A stretch of 63,533 nt of DNA, counting the filler, from Octopus bimaculoides (taxonomy: Eukaryota): NCBI RefSeq assembly GCF_001194135.2. It is 6 parts of 6 records of this genome, joined end to end, with 100 filler letters (N's around TTAATTAATTAA, not from the genome) between each part and the next. Parts side by side here need not be neighbours in the genome. Positions count along the whole stretch, not along the records: positions 35,020 to 51,235 come from NC_069006.1; 5 more parts are not named here. The stretch is one strand, 5' to 3'. The notes under the pieces were generated by a model. That model searched no databases and was not told the origin of the DNA. It worked only from the letters and a program-made list of their open reading frames with translations. Positions 34,356 to 51,341 of this stretch are shown in pieces (the first letter of the stretch is position 1; the number at the start of each line of letters is the position of its first letter). The translations under genes were made by a program, and so were the position numbers.

Positions 34356-35057
34356 ATAATAACTACGATATTTGTAAACAGTATGTAAAACTATATCGAA
34401 ATTACTGTTTTGAAAATTTTCAGATTAATATTTAAGTTTGAAAGGAAACGAAAAAGATCCAACGAACTTGCACCACATATCAGTCTTGTATTTCTCCATC
34501 ATGGACAACACACCTCTAAAATTTTTCATATCGCTACAAATAGAGACGGTCTCTCACGGTGAGCTTCCATTAACATAACTTACATCATAAAGATTAGCCT
34601 TTTTTAAGGGCTAGAAAATACTTTGAGTACTCTTTGGTTATCTCACCCCATTAAAAAATTTGGTTATCTACCCCAACTAAAAAAATTGTTTAACCCTCAA
34701 TAAAACAAAGCAAAAATGAAAAATTAATAAACATGAAAAGTGAAAAGATTAAACATCTTAATGAATCTGATAACAGGATCTAGTTCAAAACGGGGGCACC
34801 ATTTTTCATTTATGTTTTATGTAGTGTTTTTGGTACCGAAAGACTTTCAAACTTTGTATACTTATCTATTTTGTGTTATAGAACAGAAAAAATTTTTTGT
34901 ATTCGGGGTTATTTCATGTNNNNNNNNNNNNNNNNNNNNNNNNNNNNNNNNNNNNNNNNNNNNTTAATTAATTAANNNNNNNNNNNNNNNNNNNNNNNNN
35001 NNNNNNNNNNNNNNNNNNNCACACACAAACACTCACAAACATATACACATACACAGT

Positions 35058-35090
<33 letters not shown>

Positions 35091-36004
35091 TACGCACGCA
35101 CGCATACACCCAAGCATACACATATAAAACGTGGTCAATTACATTAAAACAATTCACATATTATATAGCAAAGAGGCTTAAACTCATTACGAAGATGAAA
35201 TAGCTAAGGTCAGAAAATAACAAAGTTCACAGGAACGAAAATCTTAACGGCGCTCGGCACTAAAAATGACAACATTGAATTGAAGGCTCCGGGCCGCAAT
35301 GCTTACAGATGTCGACGTAAAGGCGGGACGAATATACTTAAGATAATAAAAGTGAGTTTAATGCTTGAAGCATTTCAAATATAAAGAAGAATCTAAAGTA
35401 AGATCAAATAAACGGTAAAAATAAAATAAAATAAAATTAAATTAAATTAAAATGATATTACTCAATGAATAATATCATTTGTTCATCAGTAAACAAGGGG
35501 GAATAACTTCAGGTGTTTTACTCCCGCCACGTTTAGTTTTGTTAGGGAAATAAATACATTATGTTTGATTGTCACTCCATGGTTATATTATGTTTGGAAA
35601 GAGGTAAAATTTATTCAAATTTCAAAAACGATAAGCAAAACTTGTAGAGGAGGGATAGACCTACAAAATGAAAAAATAAAAATATGAATCACAACGATAT
35701 TTTTCGTGTTAATTCAAATAACATAGGGAATCATTAAAATATACTGGAAAACAAAAACCTAGCGAATTTATCTAACCACACAGTAATAGAGATAATAATA
35801 TTACCCTATTTCAATATGTTAGTTATGTTTGGTCTTTTCTTCTTTATATGTTTCGAATTTCTTATCAGGAAAAACAGAACCAGTTTCTAATCTAGAAACA
35901 AGAATCTTTCATTGGAATTTAGACATCAGCAGAATAGTCTTGTATATGTATATATTGATATATATATATATATATTAATATTTAAGTATATAATTATAAA
36001 AATA

Positions 36005-36175
36005 TAATTATAATTAAGGGCTCTGGAATGCTAGGGCCTACGCTAGAAGTAGATATCAAATACCTACAATCCACTTTATTTATAAATATAGAACAAATTT
36101 AGAGTCGATTGTAGGTATTTGACATCTCTTTCTAGCGTAGAGGCTGGCATTCCGGAGACCTTGATTATAATTATA
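36005..36175. repeat. Imperfect inverted repeat (about 67-bp arms)
   Basis: taattataattaagggctctggaatg...tacctacaatc versus gattgtaggta...cattccggagaccttgattataatta. Confidence 0.85.
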
Positions 36176-36329
36176 TACTTAAAAATTAATTTTACCGATA
36201 CAGTCATTTTTATACGCTAGGCCACTGATATAACCACATTTATGATTATACCCTTAACTTCTAAGTATATATATATTATTATATATATACACGCACACAC
36301 ACATATACATACATACACACACACACACA

Positions 36330-36389
<60 letters not shown>

Positions 36390-36719
36390 GTATATGTCCA
36401 CATGCATGAGTGATGCTTGCACTGGTATACGTATACGTGACTTTTTAGAGCTTAAACATTAATGAACATGTATGTATAGATATAAATATGCATATATGTA
36501 TGTGTGTATGCATTTGTGTATACGCATATGTGTATATATACGTGTATGTATGCATTCATGTATATATAAGTTTGTACATACTTGAATGCATGTACGTACG
36601 AATGTATGTATATATGTATGTCATTGTTCAGTTTTATTTCAAGATTTCTTGCCAATAGAGAAAGAACTGGTTTCTAACCTAGATCCAAGGCTCCGTATAC
36701 ACATATATCTGTATTGACG

Positions 36720-36774
<55 letters not shown>

Positions 36775-37668
36775 TCGTGTGTTTGTGTCTATCTGTTTTT
36801 TTTTTTCAAATCTTTCACCATTATTGAAAGAACCGGTTTCTAACCCAGAAACAAGCCTCTTTCATTAACTAAATTGTCACACATACATTTACATATTTAT
36901 ATATTATGAATACATGTATGGATGGATGGATGGACTTATTTATTTTTATATGTATGTCTGTATGTATGTATATATGTATGCATGTAGTTGTGTTTGTCTC
37001 CCCCACCACCGCTTCACAACCACTACTGGGTTGTTTACGTCCCCGTAACCAAGTGGTTCGGCAAAAGATACCGATAGATTAAGTATCAGGCTTTTTTAAA
37101 AAATAAGTACTGGGGGTCGATTCCTTCGACTAATCTGATTCCTGCGATGTCCCCGGCATGGCCGCAGTCCAATGACCGATGCAAGTATCAGGTAACAGAT
37201 ATCAATCTTTATACAAGGGTTTCCTGAAGTATGGAATGTCCTGCAACGGTTCCCCTCAACAGCAACACGGTTGGGAAATTGATGTAGAAGCTAGGGAAAA
37301 GAAACTCTTAGACCAGTATAAAACGACACGAAAAGCAAAACGAAAAGAAAAGCATGAATAATGTAGACATAATTTAGTTGATAACAAACAGCAAAAAAAA
37401 AAAAGATCTTGTACGTGTTTGCCGCACAAGTCGGTCAGTAACAAGACATATTCAGAGAAAGTGAGAACAGAAGACTTACCTACAAAAACGCGTGTAAGTG
37501 GTATGTTTGCCTTATCTATTTGACAGAATGTACAACATTTGGCAGTTTAATCTCTGCAAGAGTGTTTGTCACGTGATAATATGATAGTTTCAGTGATAAT
37601 ACAACGGGTGGCTTCTACAAATATTTATCATCCACTTAAAGATGTACATACATACATGCATATGTATA

Positions 37669-37711
<43 letters not shown>

Positions 37712-38587
37712 ACACTTATATTTATATACTTACATTTATATACATATGCATATAAATATGTGGAGGCACATGGTCTAGTGGTTAGCGCAAAGGACTCTTG
37801 GTCGAGGGATCACGGGTTCGAATCACAGACTGGGCGATGTGTGTGCTTATGTATTGTTTCGTTATGCACGTGATCCCCCGGTCCGTGAGATGAAATTGGT
37901 CTATGGCGCAAAAGAGGTCGGGAACCGCTGCTCCTACGAAATTTCAAAGCAAAAACAGCATACATGGCATTTCCAACAGCAAAAGTAAAATCATACACAT
38001 ATAGAAGATAATATGTAGACGTTAACTAATTGAATAATTACAATAAATGTTCCAAAATGGCCTCATTTCCTGTTTATTAAAGCTATCCTCATGCATTTTA
38101 ATTGGTTTCCCAGTTTGTTTTACTCTTCCAAAAACTATTTGCTGAATTATTCATTACTTTAAATTATGGTGGTGGTGAACAAAATTGTTAACATACCGAA
38201 CAAAATGCTTAGCAGTATTTCTTCCGCCCATTACTTCTTAGTTCAAATTCCACCGAACTAGAATTTGAATGTTTATCCTTTTCGGAGTCGATAAAAGAAG
38301 TAACAATTTGGGCCCAGGGATCGGTGTACTCGACTTGCCCTCTCCCCGAGATATTTTAGGCCTTGTCCCTTTTGTAAGGCGGAATCTTGGCTATCTTTCG
38401 ATGAAGGTAGATAGATTATGAAAGATTTGTTCGGTAATTTTCGTACAAAATTTTTATTTCTTTCATTTTTTTCAGCTAAATCGCTTATGCTCATATATCT
38501 TTTGTGTACGTATTATGGATTTATGTGTGCGCGTGTATTCATATTTGTGTATGCATCTGTACACAAATACACATACATATTCAATAG

Positions 38588-38618
<31 letters not shown>

Positions 38619-40152
38619 CATACATACATGCATGCATAAACATAAACGATTCAGCAGGAAAAAAAAAAGCGGTCTGAAGAAATAAAAAAAAAGTTACGGA
38701 AATTGCCGAACAAATGCTTTCATTATCCGTCTACCTTTATCGAAAGATAAGCAAAATTATTTATTAATTCAATTCAGGAGGCGATATGACAGAATCATTG
38801 GCATACTGAACACATTACTTAGCGGCAATTTTTCCTCCTCGTTACATACTAAGTTCAAATTCCATTGCGGTCGACTCTGCCTTTCATCCCTCCAGGGTCT
38901 ATAGTATTAGTCAAGCACTGGAGCCGATGTGATCAAATGCCCCGCCCCTAAAATTACTGATCTTGAGCCATCATTGTAAAGAATTATTTATGGCTTTAAG
39001 TATCAGGTTTCTACGCCAGATTGTATTAATTATTGCACTCTAAAACAGGTCAGTGTAACGCATATAAATAGATTTTAAGTTCTTAATGCTGATTTGACCC
39101 ATTTCAGCTTTGTAATTCAAGGGAATCAACTGTGAGCTTGCGTGTCCAAGATCAAGGACATATACAGTTTACGAAAATGAAGATATTCACAGGATCCCAC
39201 GTTTCCCCACCTCATAACTTTCTGGAAAATAGGTATTTTTTAATGAAATTTTATACAAATACCTTTCAAACTGTGTTGATTACGATTACAAAGAGACTTG
39301 TATGCAAAATTTTTGGAATGGGCGGGTGGAGGAGGCGGAGTTTCTGGAAAACGGAGATTCGGATCAGANNNNNNNNNNCCACCCCGTCACTATCCCATGC
39401 CGAAATGATTTTGGCCATTTTTTTTTTTTTTTTTCCACACTACACACTTTTAAAACCCGTGAGAGAAACATTTTCTCTGTCCATAGAGAAATACTTCACC
39501 CTCGAAGTATGGTCGTGACAACGTTTGGAGAATTCAGTTTGTATGATGTATGTGTTTGCGTTGATTTATGGTATAAATGCATACTTATAGTGAAAAAGTA
39601 TGTATGTATGTGTGTGTTTGTGTGTATATATGTGTATGCATGTATATATGTTTGTCTGTGTGTATGTACAGATATAAATGTACCGATTCTGAGTTGTATG
39701 CATTTATACAATTTATATATCGGCTCGTTATTGCTATTTTCACTGAAATCATGAGTTTTTAAAACAAGTGGACAACTACTGTAGGCGTGGTGGGGAGAAG
39801 TGGCTGATAACAACAGGTGGCGGGGTAGTAAGGAGACTGCAGATAAAGATGGTGCAGAAAAAACGCGAAGTGTAAAAATTTATCTTGCGCACAAAAGCGA
39901 GTCATTAAATTATAGTAGGATTTCAAGGGAGATAACTTTGTTGCAACTTTTTATAATAGCATGCCGTAGCTATTTCCCTTGTAAAGCGCCTCCGCATTCG
40001 GATCAACGCTTAGGCTATCAAAAATAACCGGCGTATCTGTGAAGTAAGAAGTTTTCTTCCCAACCACACGCTAAATTCTTGTAAGCAGAGTTGGTAGACG
40101 AAAACTTAAAGAAAGGCGATCTATCGATATATATTTATATTATTATTATTAT

Positions 40153-40350
40153 CAAGGCGGTGAGCTGGCAGAATCGTTAGCGTGCTGGACAAAATGCTTA
40201 GCGGCGTTTCGTCCGTCTTTACGTTCTGAGTTCAAATTCCTCCGAGGTCGACTTTGCCTTCCATCCTTTCAGGGTCGATAAAATAAGCACCAGTTGAGTT
40301 CTGGGGGTCGTTGTAGTCAACTGTCCCCTGCCCCAAAATTCCAGGCCGGT
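40153..40350 (+). mobile_element. SINE A copy (CpG-retaining)
   Basis: Full-length match to the other copies. Confidence 0.85.
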
Positions 40351-40483
40351 GGTAATAATTATGAAACACACATACTCAATGTCCCTCCTTTGCTTGTTTG
40401 CTGGTAGGCTGCGATTTGATGCAGCGGAGATGACTGTCTCAAAATCCAGAGTGTTAAAGTTATGGACAGATGAGACAACTCAC

Positions 40484-40592
40484 TCCAAGTCCCATCCAGG
40501 AGAGATGGACATCGATGTTTTGCCATTTCTGTGGCTTATCAGCATCACGCACCTGAACCAAATTGGAGGTGAATTGAATAGCCCATCCATGG
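40484..40592 (-). CDS. Candidate orphan coding exon of an unidentified gene (HGWAIQFTSNLVQVRDADKPQKWQNIDVHLSWMGLG)
   Basis: Acceptor ctctcttgcatatag, donor GGA|gtgagt; 109 nt, open frame, non-repetitive composition. Product not recognised. Confidence 0.4.
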
Positions 40593-41114
40593 CTATATGC
40601 AAGAGAGTGTAAAAATCATTTGTTGGCCTGCCTCGACAATGAATATGTAGGAATAAATTCAAATATGAATTACAAGCAATGCTACTGTTGTAAATATTAT
40701 CAAACACATGTTCAATAAAAAATACTGAGGTTGATTAACTCAACTAAAATTCTTCAAGGTGGTGCTCCAGCATGGCCACAGTCTAGTGACTGAAACGTGT
40801 AGAAGATAAATGACAATGGTAGTGTTTGAGCAAGGTGCTTGAAATTATAGTTAAAACAACACAACAAATAAAGGTTTTAAAGTTTATTTTTAATTCAATG
40901 TGAATCTCTGTTTGATACTCCACTACATGAATTAAAATAAAATATCTTAAGAAGTTGATGAGTGTGACTTTGGCCCTGGCAGCATTATAATTTCCTGGTT
41001 CCAAATGAGTCAGGTACAACAACAAAAGTTGTAATTGACTGCTACACTTTTTTCAAATGCCTAAATGAAAGATGGAACATCTTGAATGAACTTTTCAGAA
41101 AAAAATATATATGT

Positions 41115-41372
41115 TGGTACATAAAATACACCGTTTTGAGCGTGGTCGTTGCCAGTACCACCTGACTGGCCTTCGTGCGGGTGACACGTAAAAGCACCCA
41201 CTACACTCTCGGAGTGGTTGGCGTTAGGAAGGGCATCCAGCTGTAGAAACTCTGCCAAATCAGATTGGAGCCTGGTGTTGCCATCCGGTTTCACCAGTCC
41301 TCAGTCAAATCGTCCAGCCCATGCTAGCATGGAAAGCGGACGTTTAAACGATGATGATGATGATGATGATGA
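41115..41372 (+). mobile_element. RTE-tail-like interspersed repeat ending in (GAT)n
   Basis: Near-identical copy at about 42150-42470; others at 47295-47445 and 49712-49995 (-). Confidence 0.75.
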
Positions 41373-41766
41373 TGGTCCCTCATGCAGTTGGAACTTGATG
41401 ATGTGTTCTGGATGGAACCAAACAGTATGTCAAAGCTCTCTGCTGAATAACTCTCCTGTCTCCATATCAAGATCTGAACTGAATCATGCATTGCACCTCA
41501 CAGAAGAATAGCGGAAAAGATTCTTCTTTTTAAAGCTGAAGGTGGGCTCCAGTGAACAAACATAATTTGCCTGCACTAGGCTGGTCTATCACCTGATGGG
41601 ATTGGATAGCCCGCATAAAGCCCAGAAAAACCCAACCATCAAGTGACCAGGTCATGTGACCACTTGTAGAAAACACACGTATGAGCTGGTGTTGGGGGTA
41701 TTTAAAGCAAAACAGCCGAATGATAAATAAACTTCTGCTGCAATATAATCGTAAGCAATATTAACA

Positions 41767-41966
41767 TCAAATTAGCTTTTTAATTGAATATAGATATTTA
41801 ATTGCTTGAAAACACTCAGCTTCTTCCAGAGCATCTCTCAGGGGACAACATGATTTACAACCCTTAAACCACTTCTTTAACATTCGGTAACTCTGTTCTT
41901 CGGGATCACTAGGAAAGTTATTCTCAATTGTTGCCAGTACATCCTTTTCAATTCTTAAGAAAATAC
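41767..41966 (-). CDS. Exon 7 (terminal): rest of death domain (GIFLRIEKDVLATIENNFPSDPEEQSYRMLKKWFKG...LRDALEEAECFQAIKYL...)
   Basis: Acceptor catcttttacag; contains the 'I..I....P....EQ...ML..W' death-domain signature; TGA at 41769-41767. Confidence 0.83.
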
Positions 41967-44565
41967 CTGTAAAAGATGCATGAAAAAGAAACTGTTACAA
42001 CAACAACAATAACAACATTAATGCACCAAGACAGCAGTCCCCAACATTTTTTGCACAACGGACTGATTTCAGGCAAGAGTTTTCCTACAAGCCCTGGGAT
42101 CACATGCATTACAAAACAAAAAGTACGCCCGTGACATGTGTAAGGATTTTCGAGCGAGATCGTTGCCAGTGCTCCTGGACTGGCTCTTGTGCGGGTGGCA
42201 CATAAAATGCACCATTTTGAGCGTGGCCATTGCCAGTACCGCCTAACTGGCCTTCGTGCAGGTGACACGTAAAAGCACCCACTACACTCTCTGAGTGGTT
42301 GGCGTTAGGAAGGGCATCCAGCTGTAGAAACTCTGCCAAATCAGATTGGAGCCTTGTGTTGCCATCTGGTTTCACCAGTCCTCAGTCAAATCGTCCAACC
42401 CATGCTAGCATGGAAAGCGGACGTTAAACGATGATGATGATGATGATATATAATGATGATGATGATGATGATGCATATATAATACATATGTAATACATAT
42501 ATAATACACGTACACATATATAACTTATTTAATGCATATATATCCCATATATGAGGGTCGACTGAAATGTTCAGAGGTTGATCAAGATACACTCCTGATA
42601 TATGACCAAATGAGGTTTTTATTTTTCAACATTAGTCCCTCTTGCTGTTCATACACTTCTTCCATCGGCTTTGCAGTACTTGGATGCTGTTGGTGAAGAA
42701 GCTTTCACTGTGTTGCACAAAAAAGTCATCAACAGCATACATGAAGTCGTGTCATCAACAGCAGACATGAAGTCGTGTCATCAACAGCTGACATGAAGTC
42801 GTGTCATCAACAGCTGACATGAAGTCGTTATCACTGTGATATCGGTTCCCAGCCAAGTGGTTTTTTTTTCAAGTTGGGGAACAGATGATAGTCAGACGGA
42901 GCTAAATCAGGAGAATAGTAAGGCTGATCAACCATTTCAAGCCACAGCCATATACAGCAGCCATTGAAACCAAGTACTCATGTGCTGTAGCATGGTCCAG
43001 ATGAAACAAGACTCCTTTTGTCAGTTTTGCTGGCAATTTGGTCTTGGTAGCCTTTCATAACTGTCTTAGCAAGTTGATATAGTACTCTCCATTGATGGTA
43101 TGGCCCCTTTGAAGATAGTCAATAAACACAATGCCTTTTACATCCCAAAAACTGAGAGCATTACCTACTCTGCAGATGAGTCAACCTTGGCTTTCTTTGA
43201 AGCAAATGACGAGGGGTGTTTCCACTTCATGGATTATCTCTTTGTCTCTGGCTCAAAATAATGAACCCAACACCCATTCTGGGTTAGGAAACGTGCAAGG
43301 AAACCAGCTGGATCTGCCTCAAACAATGTCAGTTTTTCCCCATGATGTGATCAGCCTGGTGCACTTTTGATCAGGTGTCAGATGTGGCACCCATCGAATA
43401 GAAACCTTCATCAGGCCAAGTTCATTGTGCAGAATACTCTAAACTCTCTCACAGGATATGCTCATATCATCGGCTATTTGCTTTAGAGTGAATTGCCTGT
43501 TACCCATCACCATGTGATGAACGCAATCAATGCTTTCCAAAAGCTTGGTTAAATGTAAAATTCACAGAAATAAGCAATGTGCTGTAATTTTCTACTTACC
43601 AACTTGCTGCCATTTAGTTGGTAACACTTTTGCTATCTTTAGCAAGTCCTTTTCCTCCAGTTTTTGATAATCTGCAAAAATATTTCGAAGTCTTTCACAT
43701 TGTATTGATTTCAGATTTTGGCACAAGGCCAGCAATTTTGGAGGAGGGTGTAAATCAATTACATCAACACCAGTGTTGTAAAAAACTGGCACTCTGTTTG
43801 ATGAGGATTCCAGTTGGTTCGATTGCCAGAACAGCATGCTAGTGGCTGAGCATTCCACAGGCAAGGCGTAGCCTTCATGTTGCTCTCTAGGAGTTTCAGC
43901 ACAACACAGAATATAACAAGACTGGCCAGTTGAATTACAGCTACAACTCATTTTTGCCAGCTGCGTGTACTGGAGCAACGAGAAACAAAGCGTTATATTC
44001 AAGAAAACAATAAAACGATAAACGTCGCCCTTTTAAAGCCTAGCTAGGCTCATGGGCCCAGTTTCTATGGCGTATGTGTTCCCCCCAGCTGGACGGGATG
44101 CCAGTCCATCGCAGCGTTACTCAAGAAACAGGAAGAAAGAGTGAGAGAAAGTTGGGGCGAAAGAGTACAACAGGGGTCGCCACCACCCCCTGCCGGAGCC
44201 TCGTGGGTCTCAGGTGTTTTCGCTCAATAAACACTCACAATGCTCGGTCTGGGAATCGAAACCACAATCCTCTGACCACGAGTCCGCTGCCCTAACCACT
44301 GGGCTATTGCACCTCCGCCAAGAAAGCAATGTACCACTGGAAATTTTGCCAGATTATGGCAAAACCGGAATTAAAGCAAAACATAAACCACGTTATTTCA
44401 TACTGTAGCTGTGTGGTTAAGAACCTTGTATCCCAACCATGTGGTCTTGGGTTCCATCTCACTACACTGCATTTTAGGCAAGTGAATTCCACTATTGCCC
44501 TAGGCTGACACCAAAACCTTCTGTGTAGATCTGGTAGATGGAAACTGAAAGAAGCGTATCAAGCA

Positions 44566-44600
<35 letters not shown>

Positions 44601-47600
44601 CTTTATTTTTCTATTTGGCCCTCACCATCACTTGACAACTGGTCTTGGTTTGTTTGCATCCCTGTAACTTAGCAGTTCAGTTGAAAGAAGACCAACAGAA
44701 TAAGTATTAATCTTAGAAAGCAAGCATTGCGGTCAATTTGTTCAACCAAACTCTTCAAAGTGGTACCCAAGTATGGCCGCAGTCCAATGAAAGAAACAAG
44801 TAAAAATCGAAACCAATGCAGAAGATGTACGATTCAGTCGATGACCCACACAGACTGATCATAAAATATTTCCTTACCGAATACATTTTTGGTTGTTACT
44901 GGTTGTCGACACTGGGGACATTTTTTCAGTCTAATTTTAGAGCATTCCTTACATGTTCTTTTGTGTCCACATGGAAGGAATTTCACAGTGACCTGCTTAT
45001 CTCCACACAGCACACATTTATCCCTGTAATAGTGTAACATAGAATAAAATATAAGAAGAATAGAACTTACATATAAGTAATTTAAGTAAAATTATATGAT
45101 TTCTTATTTTTCAGTGTGTGTGCTTAAGAAAATCATGGCTTATTTTAGAATGCTTTGAATTTATAGGGTATTATTAATTCAGTTTACTTTAGTGCCATAT
45201 ATCTGTCTCCCAAGTGAATTAATTTTACATTATTTACATTTTGAATAGAAATATACAGTTTGTATGCCTTATTTGAGTAATACATCCCCAATATAACAAC
45301 CACCTTACGTCACTGGTGAGCACTTACTCAGGTGAGAAAAATCCATTTATTTTCTTCTTAAAATCTGGATCTTTTATGATGTCAAGTGGTGTCACATTGC
45401 TGTAGTTTTCATAAACTTTTTTTCTTCGATCTGTTAGAAAGCATTCCACTACTTTTCCAGGAACTTTGTCTTCCTTGCTCAAGCCAAGTTCAGAGCAGAA
45501 CTATAATAAAAAATGAAATATAAAACAATGGGTATTAATTAGGCCACAATATACAATTAACCTTTTAGCATTTAAATGGGTAACACCTGGCCTAAATATT
45601 CTACCTGTTTTACATTCAAAGAAACTAGATCCAGCTTCTCACACCTAACCTACAATGTCATTCTAAGAATACAAAAACAATCACATCATTAAAATCTCAA
45701 AGCTACAAGTTAATGAATGATTAATTTGAAACAACATGAATAAATAAGCATTATTTGATTGAATAATCTGAATGCTAAAAGGTCAAACTAACCTTATCCA
45801 GCCCAGATATTCCTGTTTTATGTTCACCCTGGCCAGATCTGACCTCATGATTGTGAGCCTGATGCCCTAACTGCTAAGGCATGTGCCTTCACTGTGGACA
45901 ATACTTTGTTTATAATAATATTGAAGGACAGTGAATAAGATCAATAAATCTATAAAATCACATAAATCTAGAGAGTGTATGTGTTAACTAACCTGGGAGA
46001 GCATCAAAGCCACCACATCATAGTGTTGCCTGAAAGTTATACAGAAAGATAACATTAAAACTAAAAGTTACGTTTTTACAAATATTCAGATAATTAATTG
46101 TTAAATTAGTAATTGATGAAAGCAAACATAAACCCAGAGAGTGCAAACCTCCGCCAAGGCAACACCTACACCGTCTCAACAATTCTATAGAGATGACTTT
46201 TAAAATAAGAATATCTGAAATAAACTTGACTCCTCTCATAAATGAGAATATTAAATATGAACCTGACCACTCTCAAAAATTTTTTAAATCAGAAAAATAA
46301 TCCAGAATCCTTGTCCAGTACTGGATTGATCCCAAAATCTCATTAGTTTGTGCCAGTCACAAGGCCAAACATCTCAGAAAGTTTCATCCGAATTCATCTG
46401 GCGGTTCTTGAGATATCTTGTCCACAGACAAACAAATAAACACGATTGAAAACAATACCTTTGCTTTCACTAAGATGGAGGTAAGAAGTAAAATCTCTCT
46501 AATTACAACATCAATAATTTCTACAATATAATTCTGTATATACACTCTATATAGAACTGTATCAATGAAGGCATGTGGCTTAGTGGTTAGGGTAACCGGC
46601 TCATGACTGTAAGGTCATGAGTTTGATTCCCGGCAGCACATTGTGTCCTTGAGCAAGACACTTTATTTCACAGTGCTCCAGTTCACTCAGCTGGCAAAAA
46701 TGAGTTGTACCAGTAATTCAAAGGGCCAGCCTTGTCACATTCTGTGTCACGCTGTGGAGTGCTCTGCCACTTGCATGTTAATTTCACAAGCAGACTGTTC
46801 CATTGATCGGGTTAACCACTAGGCTATGTGCCTATAATAATAATCCTTTCTACTATAGGCACAAGGCCTGAAATTTTGTGGGAGGGGACTAGTCAATTAC
46901 ATCAACCCCAGTGCTTGACTGGTACTTAATTTATCAACCCTGAAAGGATGAATGGCAAAATCGACCTTGGCAGAATTTGAACTTAGAAAATACAGATGAA
47001 ATGTTGCTAAACTTTTAGTCCTGAATGTTAATTACTCTCCCAGCTTGCTGTCTTAATGATGATGATGTTGATGATAGTAATATTCCTTTCTACTATAGGC
47101 ACAAGGCCTGGATTTTGTGGGGAGGGGAACAATCAATCACATCGACCCCAGTTTGCAACTGGTACTTATTTAATTGACCCCAAACATATGAAAGGCAAAG
47201 TTGACCCTGGCAGAATATGGACTTTGAATGTAAAAATGGATGAAATGCCGTTAAGCGTTTTGCCCGGTGTGCTAATCATTCTGCCGGCTAGCCACCTTAA
47301 TCATCATCATCGTTGTTGTTTAACGTCCACTTTCCATGCTGGCATGGGTTGCACGGTTTGACTGAGGACTGGCGAGCCAGAAGGCTGCACCAGGCTCCAA
47401 TCTGATCTGGCAAAGTTTCTACAGCTGAATGCCCTATCTAGTGCAGCTTTGATGTCGCATTTTTAATTCATCAGCAACATGGAAAATATTTCTGCAGCGA
47501 AGTAAAATTCTGTTAATTGTTCATGAGTGTTGTACATTCATTATACACAGCCAGAACCCAACTCAATTACCAGTGTCTCATATCCTTCATCCTATATCCA

Positions 47601-50278
47601 TCTTGACAACAGAAACAAAGGCAGTATATTTGAACAGAAATATGGTAACAAAAGGATTAATGACTCTACAAAAACAAACATTATTGAAAATATGCAATTA
47701 AAGATAAAAGAAACAGATGTGAATATTCCAGATTATTGTTGACTTACCCTAAAACTGCCAGATGTAGAGGTGTGCTACCATCATTATTCATCACATTGAC
47801 ATCAGAAGTAAACTTTATCAACATCGCCACTGTAGCAATGCGACCACCCCTACAGGCCAGGTGTAAAGGAGTGTTACCTTTACTCGTCAGCACATTGATA
47901 TCAGGTTTAAACTCCATTAACCACTTTGCTATGAGATTATCTCCATGGTGACAGACCAGATGTAAAGGTGTATTGCCTTGCTTGTCTGCTACATTGATAT
48001 TAGGTCTAGATTGTAGAAACACCTGTACAGTATCACTGTGTCCACAATGACAGACCACATGTAGAGGTGTGTGACCATACTTATTCATTAGATTAACATT
48101 AGGTTCTGAAAGTATTAACTCTCTAACTGTGTCACTATATCCACCTCGACAAGCCACATGTAGGGCTGTATCACCATATTTATTCATCGCATTGACATCA
48201 GCTTTAAACTGCATTAATACTTTCAGTATGTCACTGTGCCCACCACAGCAAGTCACATGTAGGGGTGTATTACCATTTTCATCCACCATATTGACATCAG
48301 GCTTAGAGGAGGTTGTCAACCACTTTACTGTGTCGGTGTTTCCACTACCACAGGCCATGTGCAGAGGTGTGTAGCCAAACATATTCTGCGCATTGACATC
48401 AGGGATAGACTTCATCAACAGTTCAACCAAATCACTGCATCCACCACCACAGGCCAAATGTAGAGGTGTGTTACCATTATTGTTCTTTGCCCTAACAGCA
48501 GGCTTAGATGCTAACAACATTTTTACCATGTTGTGATGTCCTCCTAAACAGGCCAAGTGCAGAGGTGTGTTACCATCATTGTTCTTCGCCTTAACATCAG
48601 GTTTAGATGCTAACAGCATCTCTACCATATCATGATGTCCTCTTAAACAGGCCACATGCAGAGGTGTGTTACCCTCTTTGTTCACCACATTCACATCAGG
48701 TTTAAATTGCAGGAACATTTTTACTGCACTATTGTGCTTGTCACGGCAGGCCGCATGTAGAGGTGTGTCACCATAAATATTTGCTACATTGACATCATGT
48801 TTGGACTTCAACAACAACTCCATTATGTCAATTTTTTCGCCATCAGAGGCTACATGAAGTGGTGTGTTACCATACTTATCCCCCACATTAATGTCAGGTG
48901 CTGACCTCAACAACATCTCCACCATTTCGATTTGTCCACCACCACAAGCCACATGTAGAGGTGTTCCTCTATACATTTTATCCACCAAATTGAGATCAGC
49001 TCCACCTTGCAGCAACAGTTCTACCATGTCAACATTTCCAACACTAACAGCCACATGTAAAGCTGTTCTACCTCCAGGGTCTTCTTTATTGATCTGAAAA
49101 AGATACATTGAAATGGTGTGTACAACAGGGGAGGAAAAGTGTGAGTAGACGGGAAATGGGAGTGAGAGTCTCTAAAGGAAGCAGGTGCAGACAGAGAAGA
49201 GCAGGTGAGAGAATTAGATTAACAGGAGGAAACAAGTGGTAGGAGAGAGAGAGAGAGAGAGAGAAGGAATGTAAGGGGGAGAGTGAGATAGATCTTCCCA
49301 GGGGCACAGTGAGAAGCGGCCGTGATTTAAACTGAAGGCAGCTCCTGGCCATAATCTAGTTGATAATTTCTGATTTTTAAAATACTGTTATTGTTGGATG
49401 GGGATCTATCCTTTAATGCAAACTGTCAAATTTAGCCCAAACACCCTGTGTGCGTGTGCGTGTGTGTGTGTGTGAAGGTGCGTGACCTAATGGTTAAACT
49501 GTTGCACTCACAATCACTAGATTGTGGGTTTGATTCCCTGATTGGGTGGCATATAGTGTTCTTGAGAAAAACACTTCATTTCACACTGCTCCAATCCTGA
49601 TCACCTAGCCAGCAGGGTGGCATCATTTGAAGGCTAAAACAATGCAAAATGCATTGTGACTAGTGATGTGTAACAACATCTAATAGCCTGGTTGGTCATG
49701 TGATATATATATCATCATCAGCATCATTTAACGTCTGTTGTCCATGCTGGCATGGGTTGGATGGTTTGACCAGGGCTGGCAAGGCTGGAAGGCTGCACCA
49801 GACCCCAGTCTGATTTGGCATGGTTTCTACACCTGGATGCCCTTCCTAATGCCAACCAGCCCAAGAATATAATGGGTGCTCTTACGAACCACCAGCACGG
49901 ATAACATATGCATGGCACCGGTATCTGCCACGACTGCAGTTTTACTTGGCTTGATGGGTCTTCTTCTCAAGCATGGCATAATGCCTCCGTGAGGCCCAGT
50001 GCTCGAAGCCCAGCATAATGTTACACACACACACACACACACATATGATGATGATGATGATGATGATGCTGTCACTGATGAGGATTTGATGGGAGGATAT
50101 AAATGAAGATGGAGGACGATATGAAACTTCACACTGGTTTGACATTGACTAATATAAAAAGACATATAAGTGGAAATGTGAAAAGATAACTTACTGTTTG
50201 TTGATTTTCTGCAATAAATTGTTCAACATGTTTCATGTCCCCTTTCATAATCTCACATAAACTCTTGTAAAAGGCCAT
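41767..50278 (-). CDS. Spliced gene encoding an ankyrin-repeat (about 14) + C3HC4 RING + death-domain protein, 685 aa; join(50278-50195,49093-47748,46029-45993,45500-45328,45023-44878,43671-43600,41966-41767)
   Basis: Exon lengths 84+1346+37+173+146+72+200=2058 nt (686 codons including TGA). All six introns are GT-AG and their phases (0,2,0,2,1,1) match with no internal stop. Domain motifs were recognised in the translation. MIB-like putative E3 ligase, but no MIB/HERC2 or ZZ domain is seen, so no symbol is given. Confidence 0.85.
42550..43575 (-). mobile_element. Mariner (DD34D-type) transposase pseudogene in intron 6
   Basis: Degenerate WVHYFEPETKRQSMKWKH, VMLSVFWDVKG, GHTINGEYY, YSPDLAPSDYHLFP; TIR-like tatgagggtcgactgaaatgttc at about 42550. 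Confidence 0.85.
42725..42828. repeat. 4x26-bp tandem repeat inside the mariner remnant
   Basis: (gtcatcaacagcWgacatgaagtcgt)x4. Confidence 0.9.
43600..43671 (-). CDS. Exon 6: start of death domain (DYQKLEEKDLLKIAKVLPTKWQQV)
   Basis: Acceptor atatttttgcag, donor G|gtaagt; L..IA..L...W..(V/L) helix 1-2 pattern of death domains. Confidence 0.8.
44025..44315 (-). mobile_element. tRNA-derived SINE (distinct family) in intron 5
   Basis: ggaggtgcaatagcccagtggttagggcagcggactc...ggtttcgattccc head. Confidence 0.7.
44405..44810 (+). mobile_element. SINE family B/C: tRNA-like head + internal (TG)n microsatellite + conserved tail
   Basis: ctgtgtggttaag...ggtagatggaaactgaaagaag-(TG)n-...ttgacaac...ggccgcagtccaatga. 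The same architecture occurs at 50375-50665 (+) and 33325-33760 (-). Tails alone occur at about 8800, 36985, 56895 and 60690; heads alone at about 53560, 55595 and 59375. Confidence 0.75.
44878..45023 (-). CDS. Exon 5: C3HC4 RING finger (IAP/MIB-type)
   Basis: CVLC-x11-CGH-x3-CxxC-x7-CPQC; acceptor tattacag, donor G|gtaagg. Confidence 0.92.
45328..45500 (-). CDS. Exon 4: linker with a degenerate capping ankyrin-like motif (FCSELGLSKEDKVPG...NVTPLDIIKDPDFKKKINGFFSP)
   Basis: Acceptor ttttttattatag, donor GA|gtaagt; open only in the frame required by the flanking exons. Confidence 0.8.
45561..45782. mobile_element. piggyBac-like MITE in intron 3
   Basis: TTAA|ccttttagcatt ... aatgctaaaagg|TCAA. 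Confidence 0.6.
45993..46029 (-). CDS. Exon 3 (37 nt): completes ankyrin repeat 14, (G)QHYDVVALMLSQ
   Basis: Acceptor tatctttctgtataactttcag, donor CAG|gttagt; phase 2 to 0 fits the neighbouring exons. Confidence 0.8.
46125..46484 (+). mobile_element. Non-autonomous element with subterminal inverted repeats (Helentron/HINE-like)
   Basis: acctccgccaagg near the 5' end and ctaagatggaggtaa at the 3' end; family assignment is inferred. Confidence 0.45.
46570..46830 (+). mobile_element. tRNA-derived SINE family D
   Basis: ggcatgtggcttagtggttagg...gtttgattcc (A/B boxes)...tccttgagcaagacactttatttcac; other copies at about 32095, 37760, 49475 (+) and 54255-54530 (-). Confidence 0.75.
46845..47300 (-). 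mobile_element. Two tandem SINE A copies in intron 2 (CpG-decayed)
   Basis: Match to the family with many CpG to TpG/CpA changes. Confidence 0.8.
47748..49093 (-). CDS. Exon 2: 13.5 tandem ankyrin repeats
   Basis: Repeating GxTPLHxAC...G..D.V..LL....DVN motif at about 33-aa period; acceptor tctttttcag|ATC, donor GG|gtaagtc. Confidence 0.97.
50195..50278 (-). CDS. Exon 1 (coding part): MAFYKSLCEIMKGDMKHVEQFIAENQQT
   Basis: ATG at 50278, donor ACA|gtaagt. An acceptor ttctatctctttctag lies at 50313 and the frame is open from there to the ATG, so the N-terminus could be longer. Confidence 0.7.
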
Positions 50279-51341
50279 GTCTTTGAATGTATCAAAAAAT
50301 GAGTAAAATATGCTAGAAAGAGATAGAAATAAACAATAATAATAAAAAAATTAGTTACAGCAAATTATGTAATGAAGGCTGTGTGGTAAGAAGCTTGCTT
50401 CCTGACCACATGGTTCTGGGTTCAGTCCCACTGCATGGCACCTTGGGCAGATGTCTAGGTGTCTTCTACTATAGCCTCTGGCTGACCAAAGCCTTGTAGG
50501 TGGATTTGGTAGATGGAAACTGAAAGAAGCCCGTCGTATATATGTATATGTATGTATCTATGTATGTGTCTCTTTGTGTCTGTGTTTGTCCCCCAATCAC
50601 CGCTTGACAACTGGTGTTGGTATGTTTATGTCCCTGTAACTTAGCAGTTTGGCAAAAAGATACATAGACACAGGTGTGACTGTGTGGTAAGAAGTTTGCT
50701 TCCCAATCACATGGTTCTGGGTCCTGTCCCACTGCATGGCACCTTGGGCAAGTAAAGATAAAAGAAACAGAAGACATTGACTCTAAAAACATCCCATGAA
50801 ATATTCTGGGTGAACACTTGTGTGATGAAGATGCTGATGTTCTCTTGAAGTGTTTCAGTTTGTAAGACAGTGTACCAGGAGAAAGTGTGATATTGTTGGA
50901 AAAAAGTATATTTGCATGGATGATGGTTCACTTGCAGTTAGTGAATCTGCAAAGAAAGAAGCTTGGAAGGGCCTCATCTTCGAAACGCCTAGTTTAGAAT
51001 AGAGGCAGCTGATGAAGGAATAATTCCATAAGTGGCCCGTCTGTTTTCCTATGTGTTTGTTCGTCTGTAAACAAAGTCCATTTTTGTGCTTTATGTTCCC
51101 CCATTCATTTTTATGACGTCCTGTACCCGGATATGCATCTATATATACATGTAGATGTAGGTATGTACATATATGTATGTATACATGCATATGCTCAGAT
51201 ATCAATTGTATTATATATATATATATGTGTATATANNNNNNNNNNNNNNNNNNNNNNNNNNNNNNNNNNNNNNNNNNNNTTAATTAATTAANNNNNNNNN
51301 NNNNNNNNNNNNNNNNNNNNNNNNNNNNNNNNNNNTATATA

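What the first reader, a model, noticed from the sequence alone, without database searches (positions are those of the whole stretch)
41767..50278. Intact hidden gene with an unusual ankyrin-RING-death domain architecture
Seen: seven exons splice in phase into 685 aa, ANK x~14, then linker, C3HC4 RING and death domain. Five exons are largely invisible to the ORF track. Known: Mind bomb ligases pair ANK with C-terminal RINGs, plant XB3/XBAT proteins are ANK-RING, and ANK+DD occurs in ankyrins, DAPK and ANKDD1. I know no characterised protein with ANK, a single RING and a terminal DD in this order. Inference: a self-contained adaptor E3 in which the DD docks on a death-fold signalling complex (TLR/MyD88-, IMD/RIPK- or PIDD-like), the ankyrin array selects substrate and the RING ubiquitinates. 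It could be a lineage-expanded cephalopod immunity or cell-death regulator derived from MIB-like genes by DD exon capture.
Basis: partly seen in the sequence, partly recalled or inferred. Interest (0 to 1): 0.78.

Follow-up and report, generated by a model that had tools for sequence, protein, structure and literature searches.

The report
Octopus ankyrin-RING-death-domain ligase gene
The seven-exon gene is real and does encode ankyrin repeats, one RING finger and a death domain, but it is one more copy of a large family that Octopus genome annotations already list as "MIB2-like" and nobody has studied, so it is not a one-off invention.

Summary
Observation confirmed. On the minus strand, seven GT-AG exons (50278-41767) join in phase into 685 aa. 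The protein has 14 regular 33-aa ankyrin repeats, a degenerate capping repeat, one complete C3HC4 RING (Pfam zf-C3HC4_3, E 5e-12) and a C-terminal death domain (Pfam Death, 27 bits, above cut-off).

The model does not rest on phase alone. Annotated Octopus paralogues have the same exon plan: an 84-nt first exon, a 37-39-nt mini-exon, a RING exon, then 72-nt and 200-nt death-domain exons, with phases 2/1/1.

The architecture is not unique. An exhaustive HMMER search found at least 26 clusters, each under 50% identical to the others, with the same linker-RING-DD module. Every one I looked up comes from O. bimaculoides, O. sinensis or O. vulgaris, under names such as "MIB2-like", "PSMD10-like" or "ankyrin-3-like". 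The closest is 38% identical overall, so this paralogue itself is not in the protein databases.

The RING is of the Mind bomb/IAP type. The death domain is closest to that of RIPK1.

Most likely function (inferred): a RING E3 ligase docked by its death domain onto death-fold signalling assemblies. I found no functional study of this family, and expression of this copy is untested.

Verdict: a new member of an Octopus-expanded, uncharacterised family. Moderate interest.

The parts
50195..50278 (-). Exon 1, coding 84 nt (28 aa: MAFYKSLCEIMKGDMKHVEQFIAENQQT). It forms the N-terminal cap of the ankyrin array. The ATG is at 50278.
   Evidence: The start context is AAAGACATGG, with an in-frame TAA 25 codons upstream. 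The donor is GTAAGT. Paralogue P0003 has an 84-nt, 28-aa first exon with its junction at the homologous place. Met1 of P0173 aligns to this Met.
47748..49093 (-). Exon 2, 1346 nt: 14 ankyrin repeats, with the last one completed by exon 3.
   Evidence: Pfam Ank, Ank_2 and Ank_4, E 1e-90 to 1e-132. There are 14 GxTPLH motifs at 33-34-aa spacing and a 99-nt DNA periodicity (D3). Acceptor TTTTTCAG, donor GTAAGT.
45993..46029 (-). Exon 3, a 37-nt mini-exon encoding (G)QHYDVVALMLSQ, the second helix of the last regular ankyrin repeat.
   Evidence: It is the only candidate that restores the frame and also matches the family: tblastn of P0006 gives 87% identity over 15 aa. The homologous mini-exon 'NNYDVVALMLSQ' lies in the same place in the O. 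vulgaris locus L002, at 43983-44021. Acceptor AACTTTCAG, donor GTTAGT.
45328..45500 (-).
   Evidence: It is conserved in 38 of the 150 best library hits and aligns with the family motif RLSGVVVAxYLAxxGAxFYxKNxxxTPLDLIKxxxLKEKL. It is helical in the model of the proxy protein. tblastn of P0173 gives E 1e-8.
44878..45023 (-). Exon 5, 146 nt: a single C3HC4 RING finger of the Mind bomb/IAP type, with the tail ...TTKNVF.
   Evidence: Pfam zf-C3HC4_3, E 5e-12. The best solved relatives are the RINGs of cIAP2, XIAP and cIAP1, E 5e-9 to 5e-8. All family-invariant Cys and His residues are kept. The exit phase (1) matches P0003.
43600..43671 (-). Exon 6, 72 nt: the first part of the death domain (DYQKLEEKDLLKIAKVLPTKWQQV).
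   Evidence: The length (72 nt) and phases (1 in, 1 out) are the same as the corresponding exon of P0003 in O. bimaculoides and of the P0173 gene (L002 64529-64609). tblastn gives 61-65% identity.
41767..41966 (-). Exon 7, 200 nt including the TGA stop (41769-41767): the rest of the death domain.
   Evidence: The coding length (200 nt) is the same as the last exon of P0003. Pfam Death scores 27 bits for exons 6+7. All nine family-invariant DD residues are kept.
40883..40888 (-). First AATAAA after the stop codon. Tentative polyadenylation signal, implying a 3' UTR of about 0.9 kb.
   Evidence: Pattern search only. Not otherwise supported.

Best explanation
This is an intact protein-coding gene in an octopod genome. 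It is a previously unlisted paralogue of an Octopus-expanded family. Family members combine an ankyrin-repeat array, a degenerate capping repeat, one Mind bomb/IAP-type RING finger and a C-terminal RIPK1-like death domain.

Shown: the gene structure, the domains, family membership and the expansion.

Inferred mechanism:
- The death domain joins oligomeric death-domain assemblies by homotypic contacts. RIPK1/IMD-like adaptors, FADD/TNFR-type platforms, or the Octopus DD-tailed receptors that carry the same DD subtype are candidate partners.
- That brings several RINGs together. RINGs of this class work as dimers, and this one keeps the hydrophobic E2-contact positions and the aromatic tail residue.
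- The clustered RINGs recruit an E2~ubiquitin and ubiquitinate proteins in the complex, or proteins held by the ankyrin array.
- In effect the death domain would replace the MZM region through which mammalian MIB2 reaches RIPK1.
For: Gene model: seven in-phase GT-AG exons give 685 aa.

Exon lengths and phases shared with annotated paralogues: an 84-nt exon 1; a RING exon leaving phase 1; a 72-nt and then a 200-nt DD exon; and the mini-exon.

Domains: Pfam Ank, zf-C3HC4_3 and Death, all above their cut-offs.

Family:
- 755 library hits, 43 at E<=1e-10.
- At least 26 representatives carry RING+DD and 38 carry the capping repeat.
- All those looked up are Octopus spp..
- The closest full-length relative, P0173, shows 38% identity over 99% of the query with the same termini.

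Death domain: the family profile against PDB gives RIPK1 DD at E 2e-14, then ankyrin-G, PIDD, Fas, FADD and CRADD. In an AlphaFold model of the proxy P0173 C-terminus the DD has pLDDT 88-95. It superposes on FADD, ankyrin-G, PIDD and RIPK1 DDs with TM 0.7-0.85.

RING: the closest solved relatives are cIAP2, XIAP and cIAP1. The best RING-only library hits are true Mind bomb proteins. All zinc ligands are present, as are the C-V-L-C and C-P-x-C positions and the ...NVF tail, which aligns with the IAP tail region (and read from the sequence).

Precedent: MIB2 ubiquitylates RIPK1, including its DD, and reaches it through the MZM region (PMC5912950). cIAPs (established knowledge of the IAP family) and oyster IAPs (PMC8917759) combine a death-fold domain with this RING type.
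Against: There is no transcript evidence for this locus. No identical or near-identical protein is in the databases, so it may be unexpressed.

Its DD departs from the family at two places. It has Pro where most members have Gly in the 'LG..W' motif, and a 4-residue deletion in a loop of the second half of the domain. Its own Pfam Death score is only modestly above the cut-off (27 against 22.6).

It lacks the 210-nt cassette exon, encoding two degenerate repeats, that the closest paralogues have.

E3 activity, RING dimerisation, DD partners and ankyrin ligands are all inferred.

Confidence: 0.72

Rival explanations
1. The copy is a young, unexpressed or decaying paralogue (a pseudogene-in-waiting). 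Its reading frame is still open, but it no longer makes a working protein.
For: No matching protein model exists in three annotated Octopus proteomes. The cassette exon is lost. The DD has a 4-residue deletion and a Gly-to-Pro change at a well-conserved position. The introns are full of SINE-like and mariner insertions. The family is large, and large families shed copies.
Against: There are 2058 nt of uninterrupted spliced frame, six canonical intron pairs, a good start context, all RING ligands and all nine DD invariants. Other annotated paralogue models also join the mini-exon directly to the capping-repeat exon (P0005, P0015). Transposon-rich introns are normal for octopus genes.
Confidence: 0.15
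2. The locus yields separate products and the full ANK-RING-DD protein is not the main one. One product would be an ANK-RING protein that ends 14 codons into retained intron 5 (...NVFGKEIFYDQSVWVID*). The other would be a small DD-only transcript that uses exons 6-7.
For: Reading through the exon 5 donor reaches a stop after 14 codons. DD-only genes of the same subtype exist, one of them next to a family member (L001 3196-6013). Several database models lack the DD or skip the first DD exon (P0005, P0010, P0016, P0017, P0020). The frame upstream of exon 6 stays open with internal ATGs.
Against: The RING-to-DD junction has the same position, phase and exon sizes as in the P0003 and P0173 models, which do join RING to DD. 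The exon 5 donor, G|GTAAGG, is strong. The open frame upstream of exon 6 is repeat-derived sequence (D10, I4). This reading would add isoforms without removing the full-length one.
Confidence: 0.1
3. The protein is real but works without catalysis. It would act as a death-domain decoy or scaffold that caps or sequesters DD assemblies, with the RING serving only for dimerisation.
For: DD-only and DD-plus-repeat proteins often act as regulators of DD oligomers (established knowledge of the family). Nothing here measures ligase activity.
Against: All eight zinc ligands and the usual E2-contact positions are conserved across paralogues that are otherwise only 35-50% identical. That pattern argues for selection on a working RING.
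Confidence: 0.12
4. It is simply the Octopus orthologue of Mind bomb 1 or 2, as the database names of its relatives suggest.
For: Relatives are named 'E3 ubiquitin-protein ligase MIB2/MIB1-like'. The ANK-then-RING order and the RING subtype match Mind bomb.
Against: Pfam finds no MIB_HERC2, ZZ or SH3_15 (REP) domain in this protein or in P0173. Both have one RING instead of the three found in the Mind bomb proteins, and both carry a death domain. True Mind bomb proteins with all those domains are separate hits in the same search (P0039, P0041, P0064).
Confidence: 0.01

Closest known systems
Octopus predicted ANK-RING-DD proteins. Examples: O. sinensis 'ankyrin repeat, PH and SEC7 domain containing protein secG-like isoform X2' (P0173, 668 aa); O. 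bimaculoides XP_014782788.1 'PSMD10-like' (P0003); XP_014776763.1 'MIB2 isoform X2' (P0006); O. sinensis XP_029652081.1 'MIB1-like' (P0012).
   Same: The domain order is the same: N-terminal cap, ankyrin array, degenerate capping repeat, one RING, C-terminal DD. So is the exon plan: an 84-nt exon 1, the mini-exon, the RING exon, 72-nt and 200-nt DD exons, phases 2/1/1. The invariant RING and DD residues are shared.
   Different: Identity is only 38% overall and 33-50% in the RING-DD part. All 14 regular repeats sit in one exon. The 210-nt cassette exon is absent. RING and DD abut with no spacer, whereas some paralogues have up to about 125 aa of tandem 'CPKSEEKAVQAVVES'-like repeats there. The DD has a 4-residue deletion. 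No database entry corresponds to this copy.
Mind bomb E3 ligases (MIB1, MIB2)
   Same: Ankyrin repeats are followed by C3HC4 RINGs of Pfam type zf-C3HC4_3. Mind bomb proteins are the best RING-only matches. MIB2 acts on the death-domain protein RIPK1 in TNF signalling (PMC5912950).
   Different: There is no MIB/HERC2-ZZ-MIB/HERC2 (MZM) substrate-binding region and no REP/SH3_15 domain. There is one RING instead of the three seen in the Mind bomb hits, and a death domain is added after the RING.
Inhibitor-of-apoptosis proteins with a death-fold domain: vertebrate cIAP1/2 (BIR-CARD-RING) and oyster IAPs (BIR-DD-RING, PMC8917759)
   Same: The RING subtype is the same; the closest solved structures are cIAP2, XIAP and cIAP1. 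One chain combines a death-fold module with that RING.
   Different: There are no BIR domains. The death-fold domain follows the RING instead of preceding it. The recognition module is an ankyrin array.
RIPK1 death domain, and the IMD-type DD-only adaptors related to it
   Same: RIPK1 is the best solved relative of the family's DD profile (E 2e-14). An Octopus 300-aa DD-only protein named 'RIPK1-like' (P0056) carries the same DD subtype, 42% identical.
   Different: There is no kinase domain or RHIM. Here the DD is attached to an E3 module.
ANK + DD proteins without a RING (ankyrins, ANKDD1, DAPK1) and plant ANK-RING ligases (XB3/XBAT)
   Same: They show partial architectures, ANK...DD or ANK-RING. 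Ankyrin-G and ankyrin-B DDs are the next-best DD matches.
   Different: Ankyrins have ZU5-UPA before the DD and no RING. The XB3/XBAT RING model scores 11.8 bits against a cut-off of 50, and those proteins have no DD.

Membership tests
Octopus ANK-RING-DD ('MIB2-like') paralogue family | C-terminal module of capping repeat + single RING + death domain that aligns over its whole length | tested here: met
   phmmer of the 196-aa C-terminus gives single stretches covering residues 2-190 in P0003, 5-191 in P0008 and 4-189 in P0011, with E 1e-23 to 1e-31. Alignments A2 and A4.
Octopus ANK-RING-DD ('MIB2-like') paralogue family | Shared exon plan and intron phases | tested here: met
   Exon 1 is 84 nt in both. 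The DD exons are 72 and 200 nt in both. Phases 2/1/1 are identical to P0003. The mini-exon is conserved in locus L002.
Octopus ANK-RING-DD ('MIB2-like') paralogue family | Family-invariant residues: seven invariant RING ligands plus a nearly invariant eighth Cys, and nine invariant DD positions | tested here: met
   C10 C13 C25 H27 C31 C34 C42 (and C45), together with L, W, L, L, W, L, A, C, L of the DD, are all present in the window protein.
Octopus ANK-RING-DD ('MIB2-like') paralogue family | Expression as one ANK-RING-DD transcript | not testable with these tools
   No RNA data are available.
Mind bomb (MIB1/MIB2) | N-terminal MIB/HERC2-ZZ-MIB/HERC2 region and REP (SH3_15) domains | tested here: not met
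   Pfam finds none in the window protein or in P0173. It finds them in the true Mind bomb hits P0039, P0041 and P0064.
Mind bomb (MIB1/MIB2) | Ankyrin repeats followed by two or three zf-C3HC4_3 RINGs | tested here: inconclusive
   ANK followed by a RING of the right subtype is present, but there is only one RING, here and in all 27 family members checked.
RING-type E3 ligase (zf-C3HC4_3 / IAP-MIB subtype) | Complete C3HC4 cross-brace ligand set and a Pfam score above the cut-off | tested here: met
   C-X2-C-X11-C-X-H-X3-C-X2-C-X7-C-X2-C. Pfam gives 45.8 bits against a cut-off of 27. PDB cIAP2, E 4.6e-9.
RING-type E3 ligase (zf-C3HC4_3 / IAP-MIB subtype) | E2-dependent ubiquitin transfer | not testable with these tools
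   This needs a biochemical assay.
Death domain (DD subfamily of the death-fold superfamily) | Pfam Death match above the gathering score | tested here: met
   27.0 bits against 22.6 for the 90-aa C-terminus. 23 of 25 family DDs match, best E 9e-15.
Death domain (DD subfamily of the death-fold superfamily) | Death-fold helical bundle | tested here: inconclusive
   Met for the proxy P0173: pLDDT 88-95, with TM 0.7-0.85 to FADD, ankyrin-G, PIDD and RIPK1 DDs. The window protein itself could not be modelled and carries a 4-residue loop deletion.
Inhibitor of apoptosis (IAP) | At least one BIR domain | tested here: not met
   No BIR hit in Pfam.
Plant XB3/XBAT ANK-RING ligases | XB3/XBAT31-type RING | tested here: not met
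   PF24921 scores 11.8 bits against a cut-off of 50.
Ankyrin / ANKDD-type ANK+DD proteins | ZU5-UPA supramodule before the DD (ankyrins), and no RING | tested here: not met
   No ZU5 or UPA hit, and a RING lies between ANK and DD.

The most novel reading that the evidence does not exclude
The Octopus ANK-RING-DD family could be a fast-diversifying innate-immune or cell-death module specific to that lineage. Variable ankyrin arrays would recognise ligands or substrates. Polymerisation through a shared RIPK1/IMD-like death domain would switch on the built-in RING. The family would be wired to Octopus proteins that carry the same DD subtype: a DD-tailed LRR-GPS-7TM adhesion GPCR, an IMD-like 300-aa adaptor and stand-alone DD genes. 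Together these would form a self-contained death-fold ubiquitin network with no counterpart in model animals.
Probability: 0.2. Interest if true: 0.7.

Novelty: new member of a known kind. Interest (0 to 1): 0.4.

Why it matters
For genome annotation, this is a complete 685-aa gene of a multi-copy family that has no matching database protein. Automated names for its relatives ('MIB2', 'PSMD10-like', 'ankyrin-3-like', 'secG-like') hide the fact that they share one architecture. Some models drop the first death-domain exon.

For biology, the family puts a ubiquitin ligase and a RIPK1-like death domain on one chain. Vertebrates achieve the same pairing with separate proteins: MIB2 or cIAPs acting on RIPK1. 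If the family is active, it offers a compact natural system for studying how death-domain assemblies recruit and activate E3 ligases. It would also be a candidate component of the poorly known cephalopod innate immune and cell-death machinery.

This single gene is not a new principle. Domain shuffling of death domains is already well documented in marine invertebrates (PMC8195603, PMC8917759).

Tried and rejected
- The word-indexed protein search with the 196-aa C-terminus found nothing. That was a limit of the index; the exhaustive HMMER search found the family.
- Exact look-up of the 454-aa ankyrin ORF found nothing on record. P0173 is also not on record.
- I searched both introns between exons 2 and 4 for a relic of the 210-nt cassette exon. 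tblastn at E<=10 gave no credible hit.
- I looked for a second paralogue or other family exons elsewhere in 35020-51235 and found none.
- Six other 37-nt exon-3 candidates were discarded, because only 46029-45993 matches the family.
- A tRNA scan for tRNA-derived SINE heads found nothing.
- A more sensitive family DD HMM, run over the 150 best hits to look for RING+DD proteins outside the family, added only one truncated Octopus-like hit.
- Seven full-text literature searches found no paper on this architecture or on the Octopus family.
- Rejected on domain content: Mind bomb orthology, IAP membership and XB3/XBAT membership.

Full report
**1. What is in the sequence**

The feature lies on the minus strand of the piece 35020-51235. 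A three-frame translation and inspection of the boundaries give seven exons:
- 50278-50195
- 49093-47748
- 46029-45993
- 45500-45328
- 45023-44878
- 43671-43600
- 41966-41767

Each intron starts with GT and ends with AG behind a pyrimidine tract. The phases fit, and the joined 2058 nt translate to 685 aa plus TGA.

The start codon has a good context (AAAGACATGG) and an in-frame stop 25 codons upstream. The first AATAAA lies 878 nt beyond the stop.

**2. Domains**

There are fourteen G-x-T-P/A-L-H motifs at 33-34-aa spacing, with a 99-nt DNA periodicity. Pfam reports Ank families at E 1e-90 to 1e-132.

It is conserved in relatives (family motif RLSGVVVAxYLAxxGAxFYxKN...TPLDLIK) and helical in the model of a relative.

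Exon 5 encodes one RING with the full ligand set C-X2-C-X11-C-X-H-X3-C-X2-C-X7-C-X2-C. Pfam zf-C3HC4_3 scores 45.8 bits against a cut-off of 27. The closest solved sequences are the cIAP2, XIAP and cIAP1 RINGs.

Exons 6 and 7 encode 90 aa that match Pfam Death at 27.0 bits against a cut-off of 22.6. The score is 24.4 bits within the longer construct.

**3. Is the splicing model right?**

No RNA data can be reached with these tools, so I tested the model against relatives. An exhaustive HMMER search of 1.84 billion representatives with the 196-aa C-terminus gave 755 hits. Of these, 43 had E<=1e-10. Several cover linker, RING and DD in one stretch.

I mapped O. bimaculoides XP_014782788.1 (P0003) onto its own locus L001. 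It has:
- a first coding exon of 84 nt (28 aa);
- a RING exon entered in phase 2 and left in phase 1;
- a 72-nt DD exon left in phase 1;
- a 200-nt last coding exon.

These are the same lengths (84, 72, 200) and phases as in the window. The junctions fall at homologous residues...WWQV|GIFLGV there against ...WQQV|GIFLRI here.

The 37-nt mini-exon is also conserved. In the O. vulgaris locus L002, 'NNYDVVALMLSQ' lies as a separate mini-exon between the large ankyrin exon and the next exon.

tblastn with ten family members hits the window's exons in collinear order and nothing else credible in the piece. The model therefore rests on homology of the whole exon plan, not only on open frames.

**4. 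One structural difference**

The closest paralogues have a 210-nt, phase 0/0 cassette exon encoding two degenerate repeats. It sits between the mini-exon and the capping-repeat exon. The window has no trace of it.

Other family models also join 'MLSQ' directly to 'CC.EL.L' (P0005, P0015). The shorter form is therefore a known variant.

**5. How common is the architecture?**

Among the 150 best library hits, 26 representatives carry both the RING and the DD of this family. Representatives are under 50% identical to one another. Another 17 carry the DD only, and 38 carry the capping repeat.

Every RING+DD representative I looked up comes from O. bimaculoides, O. sinensis or O. vulgaris. Their names include 'E3 ubiquitin-protein ligase MIB2/MIB1-like', '26S proteasome non-ATPase regulatory subunit 10-like', 'ankyrin-3-like' and 'secG-like'. 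A profile search returned only Octopus proteins, some with precomputed Pfam Ank + zf-C3HC4_3 + Death.

Weaker relatives from a bryozoan, a beetle and a tardigrade match only the stretch up to and including the RING, not the DD. A family DD HMM found no RING+DD protein outside the family among the 150 hits.

'Octopus only' remains provisional. Nine of the 26 were not looked up, and squid or nautilus proteomes may be thinly represented.

The closest full-length relative (P0173, O. sinensis, 668 aa) is 38% identical over 99% of the query. No near-identical protein exists in the collection. Interspersed repeats in the window match repeats in an O. bimaculoides locus at up to 95% identity, which fits an octopod source. 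This copy is most likely an unannotated paralogue, or it comes from an unannotated octopod.

**6. What kind of RING and DD?**

The best RING-only hits are genuine Mind bomb proteins with MIB_HERC2, ZZ, SH3_15, ANK and three RINGs, followed by an IAP. The window protein and P0173 have none of the Mind bomb N-terminal domains and only one RING. They are MIB-like in the ANK-RING part but are not Mind bomb orthologues.

A profile of 25 family DDs finds the RIPK1 DD first (E 2e-14). Ankyrin-G, PIDD, ankyrin-B, Fas, FADD, CRADD, TNFR1 and TRADD follow.

Mean pLDDT was 78, and 88-95 across the DD. Foldseek placed the DD on FADD, ankyrin-G, PIDD, ankyrin-1 and RIPK1 DDs (TM 0.7-0.85, rmsd 1.5-2.5 Å). 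It placed the RING on cIAP2, IDOL, XIAP and cIAP1 (TM about 0.6-0.7). The Foldseek E-values are only about 0.01.

**7. How it most likely works**

Shown: an intact gene with an ankyrin array, a RING with all ligands and a DD with all family invariants.

Inferred:
- DDs assemble into homotypic oligomers, and RINGs of the IAP/MIB class act as dimers.
- A DD that joins a RIPK1/IMD-, FADD- or receptor-type platform would cluster the RINGs. They would then ubiquitinate platform components or proteins held by the ankyrin array.

Precedents:
- Mammalian MIB2 binds oligomeric RIPK1 through its MZM region and ubiquitylates it, including in the DD (PMC5912950). Here a DD could replace the missing MZM.
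- cIAP1/2 (established knowledge of the IAP family) and oyster IAPs (PMC8917759) combine a death-fold domain with the same RING type.
- FADD and CRADD exist in molluscs, including a cephalopod (PMC11463336).

Possible partners with the same DD subtype are visible in Octopus:
- a 300-aa DD-only 'RIPK1-like' protein (P0056);
- an LRR-GPS-7tm_2 adhesion GPCR with a C-terminal DD (P0067; one such sequence is noted in PMC6408891);
- stand-alone DD genes, one of them beside P0003.

I put the identity of the gene and its family membership at about 0.95. I put expression of a functional full-length protein at about 0.7, and the docked-E3 mechanism at about 0.5.

**8. Reasons for caution**

This copy's DD has Pro in place of the usual Gly in 'LG..W' and a 4-residue deletion in a loop of the second half of the domain. 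Its Death score is only modestly above threshold. The gene has no database counterpart and may be silent.

Reading through the exon 5 donor gives a stop after 14 codons, so an ANK-RING isoform is possible. Several database models of relatives lack the DD or skip its first exon.

**9. Novelty**

Seven full-text searches found no description of this architecture or of the Octopus family.

That is half met: common in Octopus databases, but not characterised. Lineage-specific shuffling and expansion of death domains is well known in marine invertebrates (PMC8195603, PMC8917759).

I therefore rate this gene as a new member of a known, computationally catalogued kind, with moderate interest. The family as a whole is the more interesting object.

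Noticed in passing
window 42834-43561 (-), inside intron 6: A decayed mariner/Tc1-type transposase broken by stops and frameshifts. Pfam gives Transposase_1 (E 4e-12) and HTH_Tnp_Tc3_2 (E 8e-5) on the fragments.
   Followed up: yes
window 41115-41347 and 42196-42428 (94% identical); related copies at 47300-47444 and 49711-49932; another family at 43709-43775, 46847-46913 and 47087-47153: Several SINE-like interspersed repeat families sit in the introns and the 3' flank. One copy ends 38 nt from the exon 6 acceptor. It accounts for most of the misleading 136-aa ORF 43592-44002, which ends in exon 6. Copies match repeats in an O. bimaculoides locus at 67-95% identity.
   Followed up: partly
window 35050-37800 and 38570-38640; N run at 39369-39378: Dense TA/CA/CATA microsatellites and low GC (27-31%) downstream of the gene, plus a 10-N assembly gap. 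No coding signal was seen there.
   Followed up: no
L002 64529-64609 (O. vulgaris OX597821.1), compared with protein P0017 (CAI9726805.1): The O. vulgaris gene model skips the first death-domain exon, although that exon is present in the locus. It also truncates the RING. The O. sinensis isoform X2 (P0173) includes both. Even so, Pfam does not report Death on full-length P0173 at E<=0.001. The shared architecture is therefore easy to miss in automated annotation.
   Followed up: partly
proteins P0067 (O. bimaculoides XP_014788728.1, 1283 aa) and P0056 (XP_052833014.1, 300 aa): The same death-domain subtype (about 40-42% identical) sits at the C-terminus of an LRR-GPS-7tm_2 adhesion GPCR and of a DD-only 'RIPK1-like' protein with an IMD-like layout. 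Both are candidate partners of the ANK-RING-DD family.
   Followed up: partly
proteins P0007, P0015, P0004, P0019 (between RING and DD): Some paralogues carry 50-125 aa of tandem repeats of about 17 aa (CPKSEEKAVQAVVESVV-like, or CPRCREKTVKTVAESFE) between RING and DD. The window gene and P0173 have none. The spacer length therefore varies greatly within the family.
   Followed up: no
L001 3196-6013 (-) (O. bimaculoides CM046630.1): A stand-alone 117-aa death-domain gene of the same subtype lies about 4 kb from the ANK-RING-DD gene P0003, on the opposite strand. Several family members share scaffolds, which suggests clustered duplication.
   Followed up: partly
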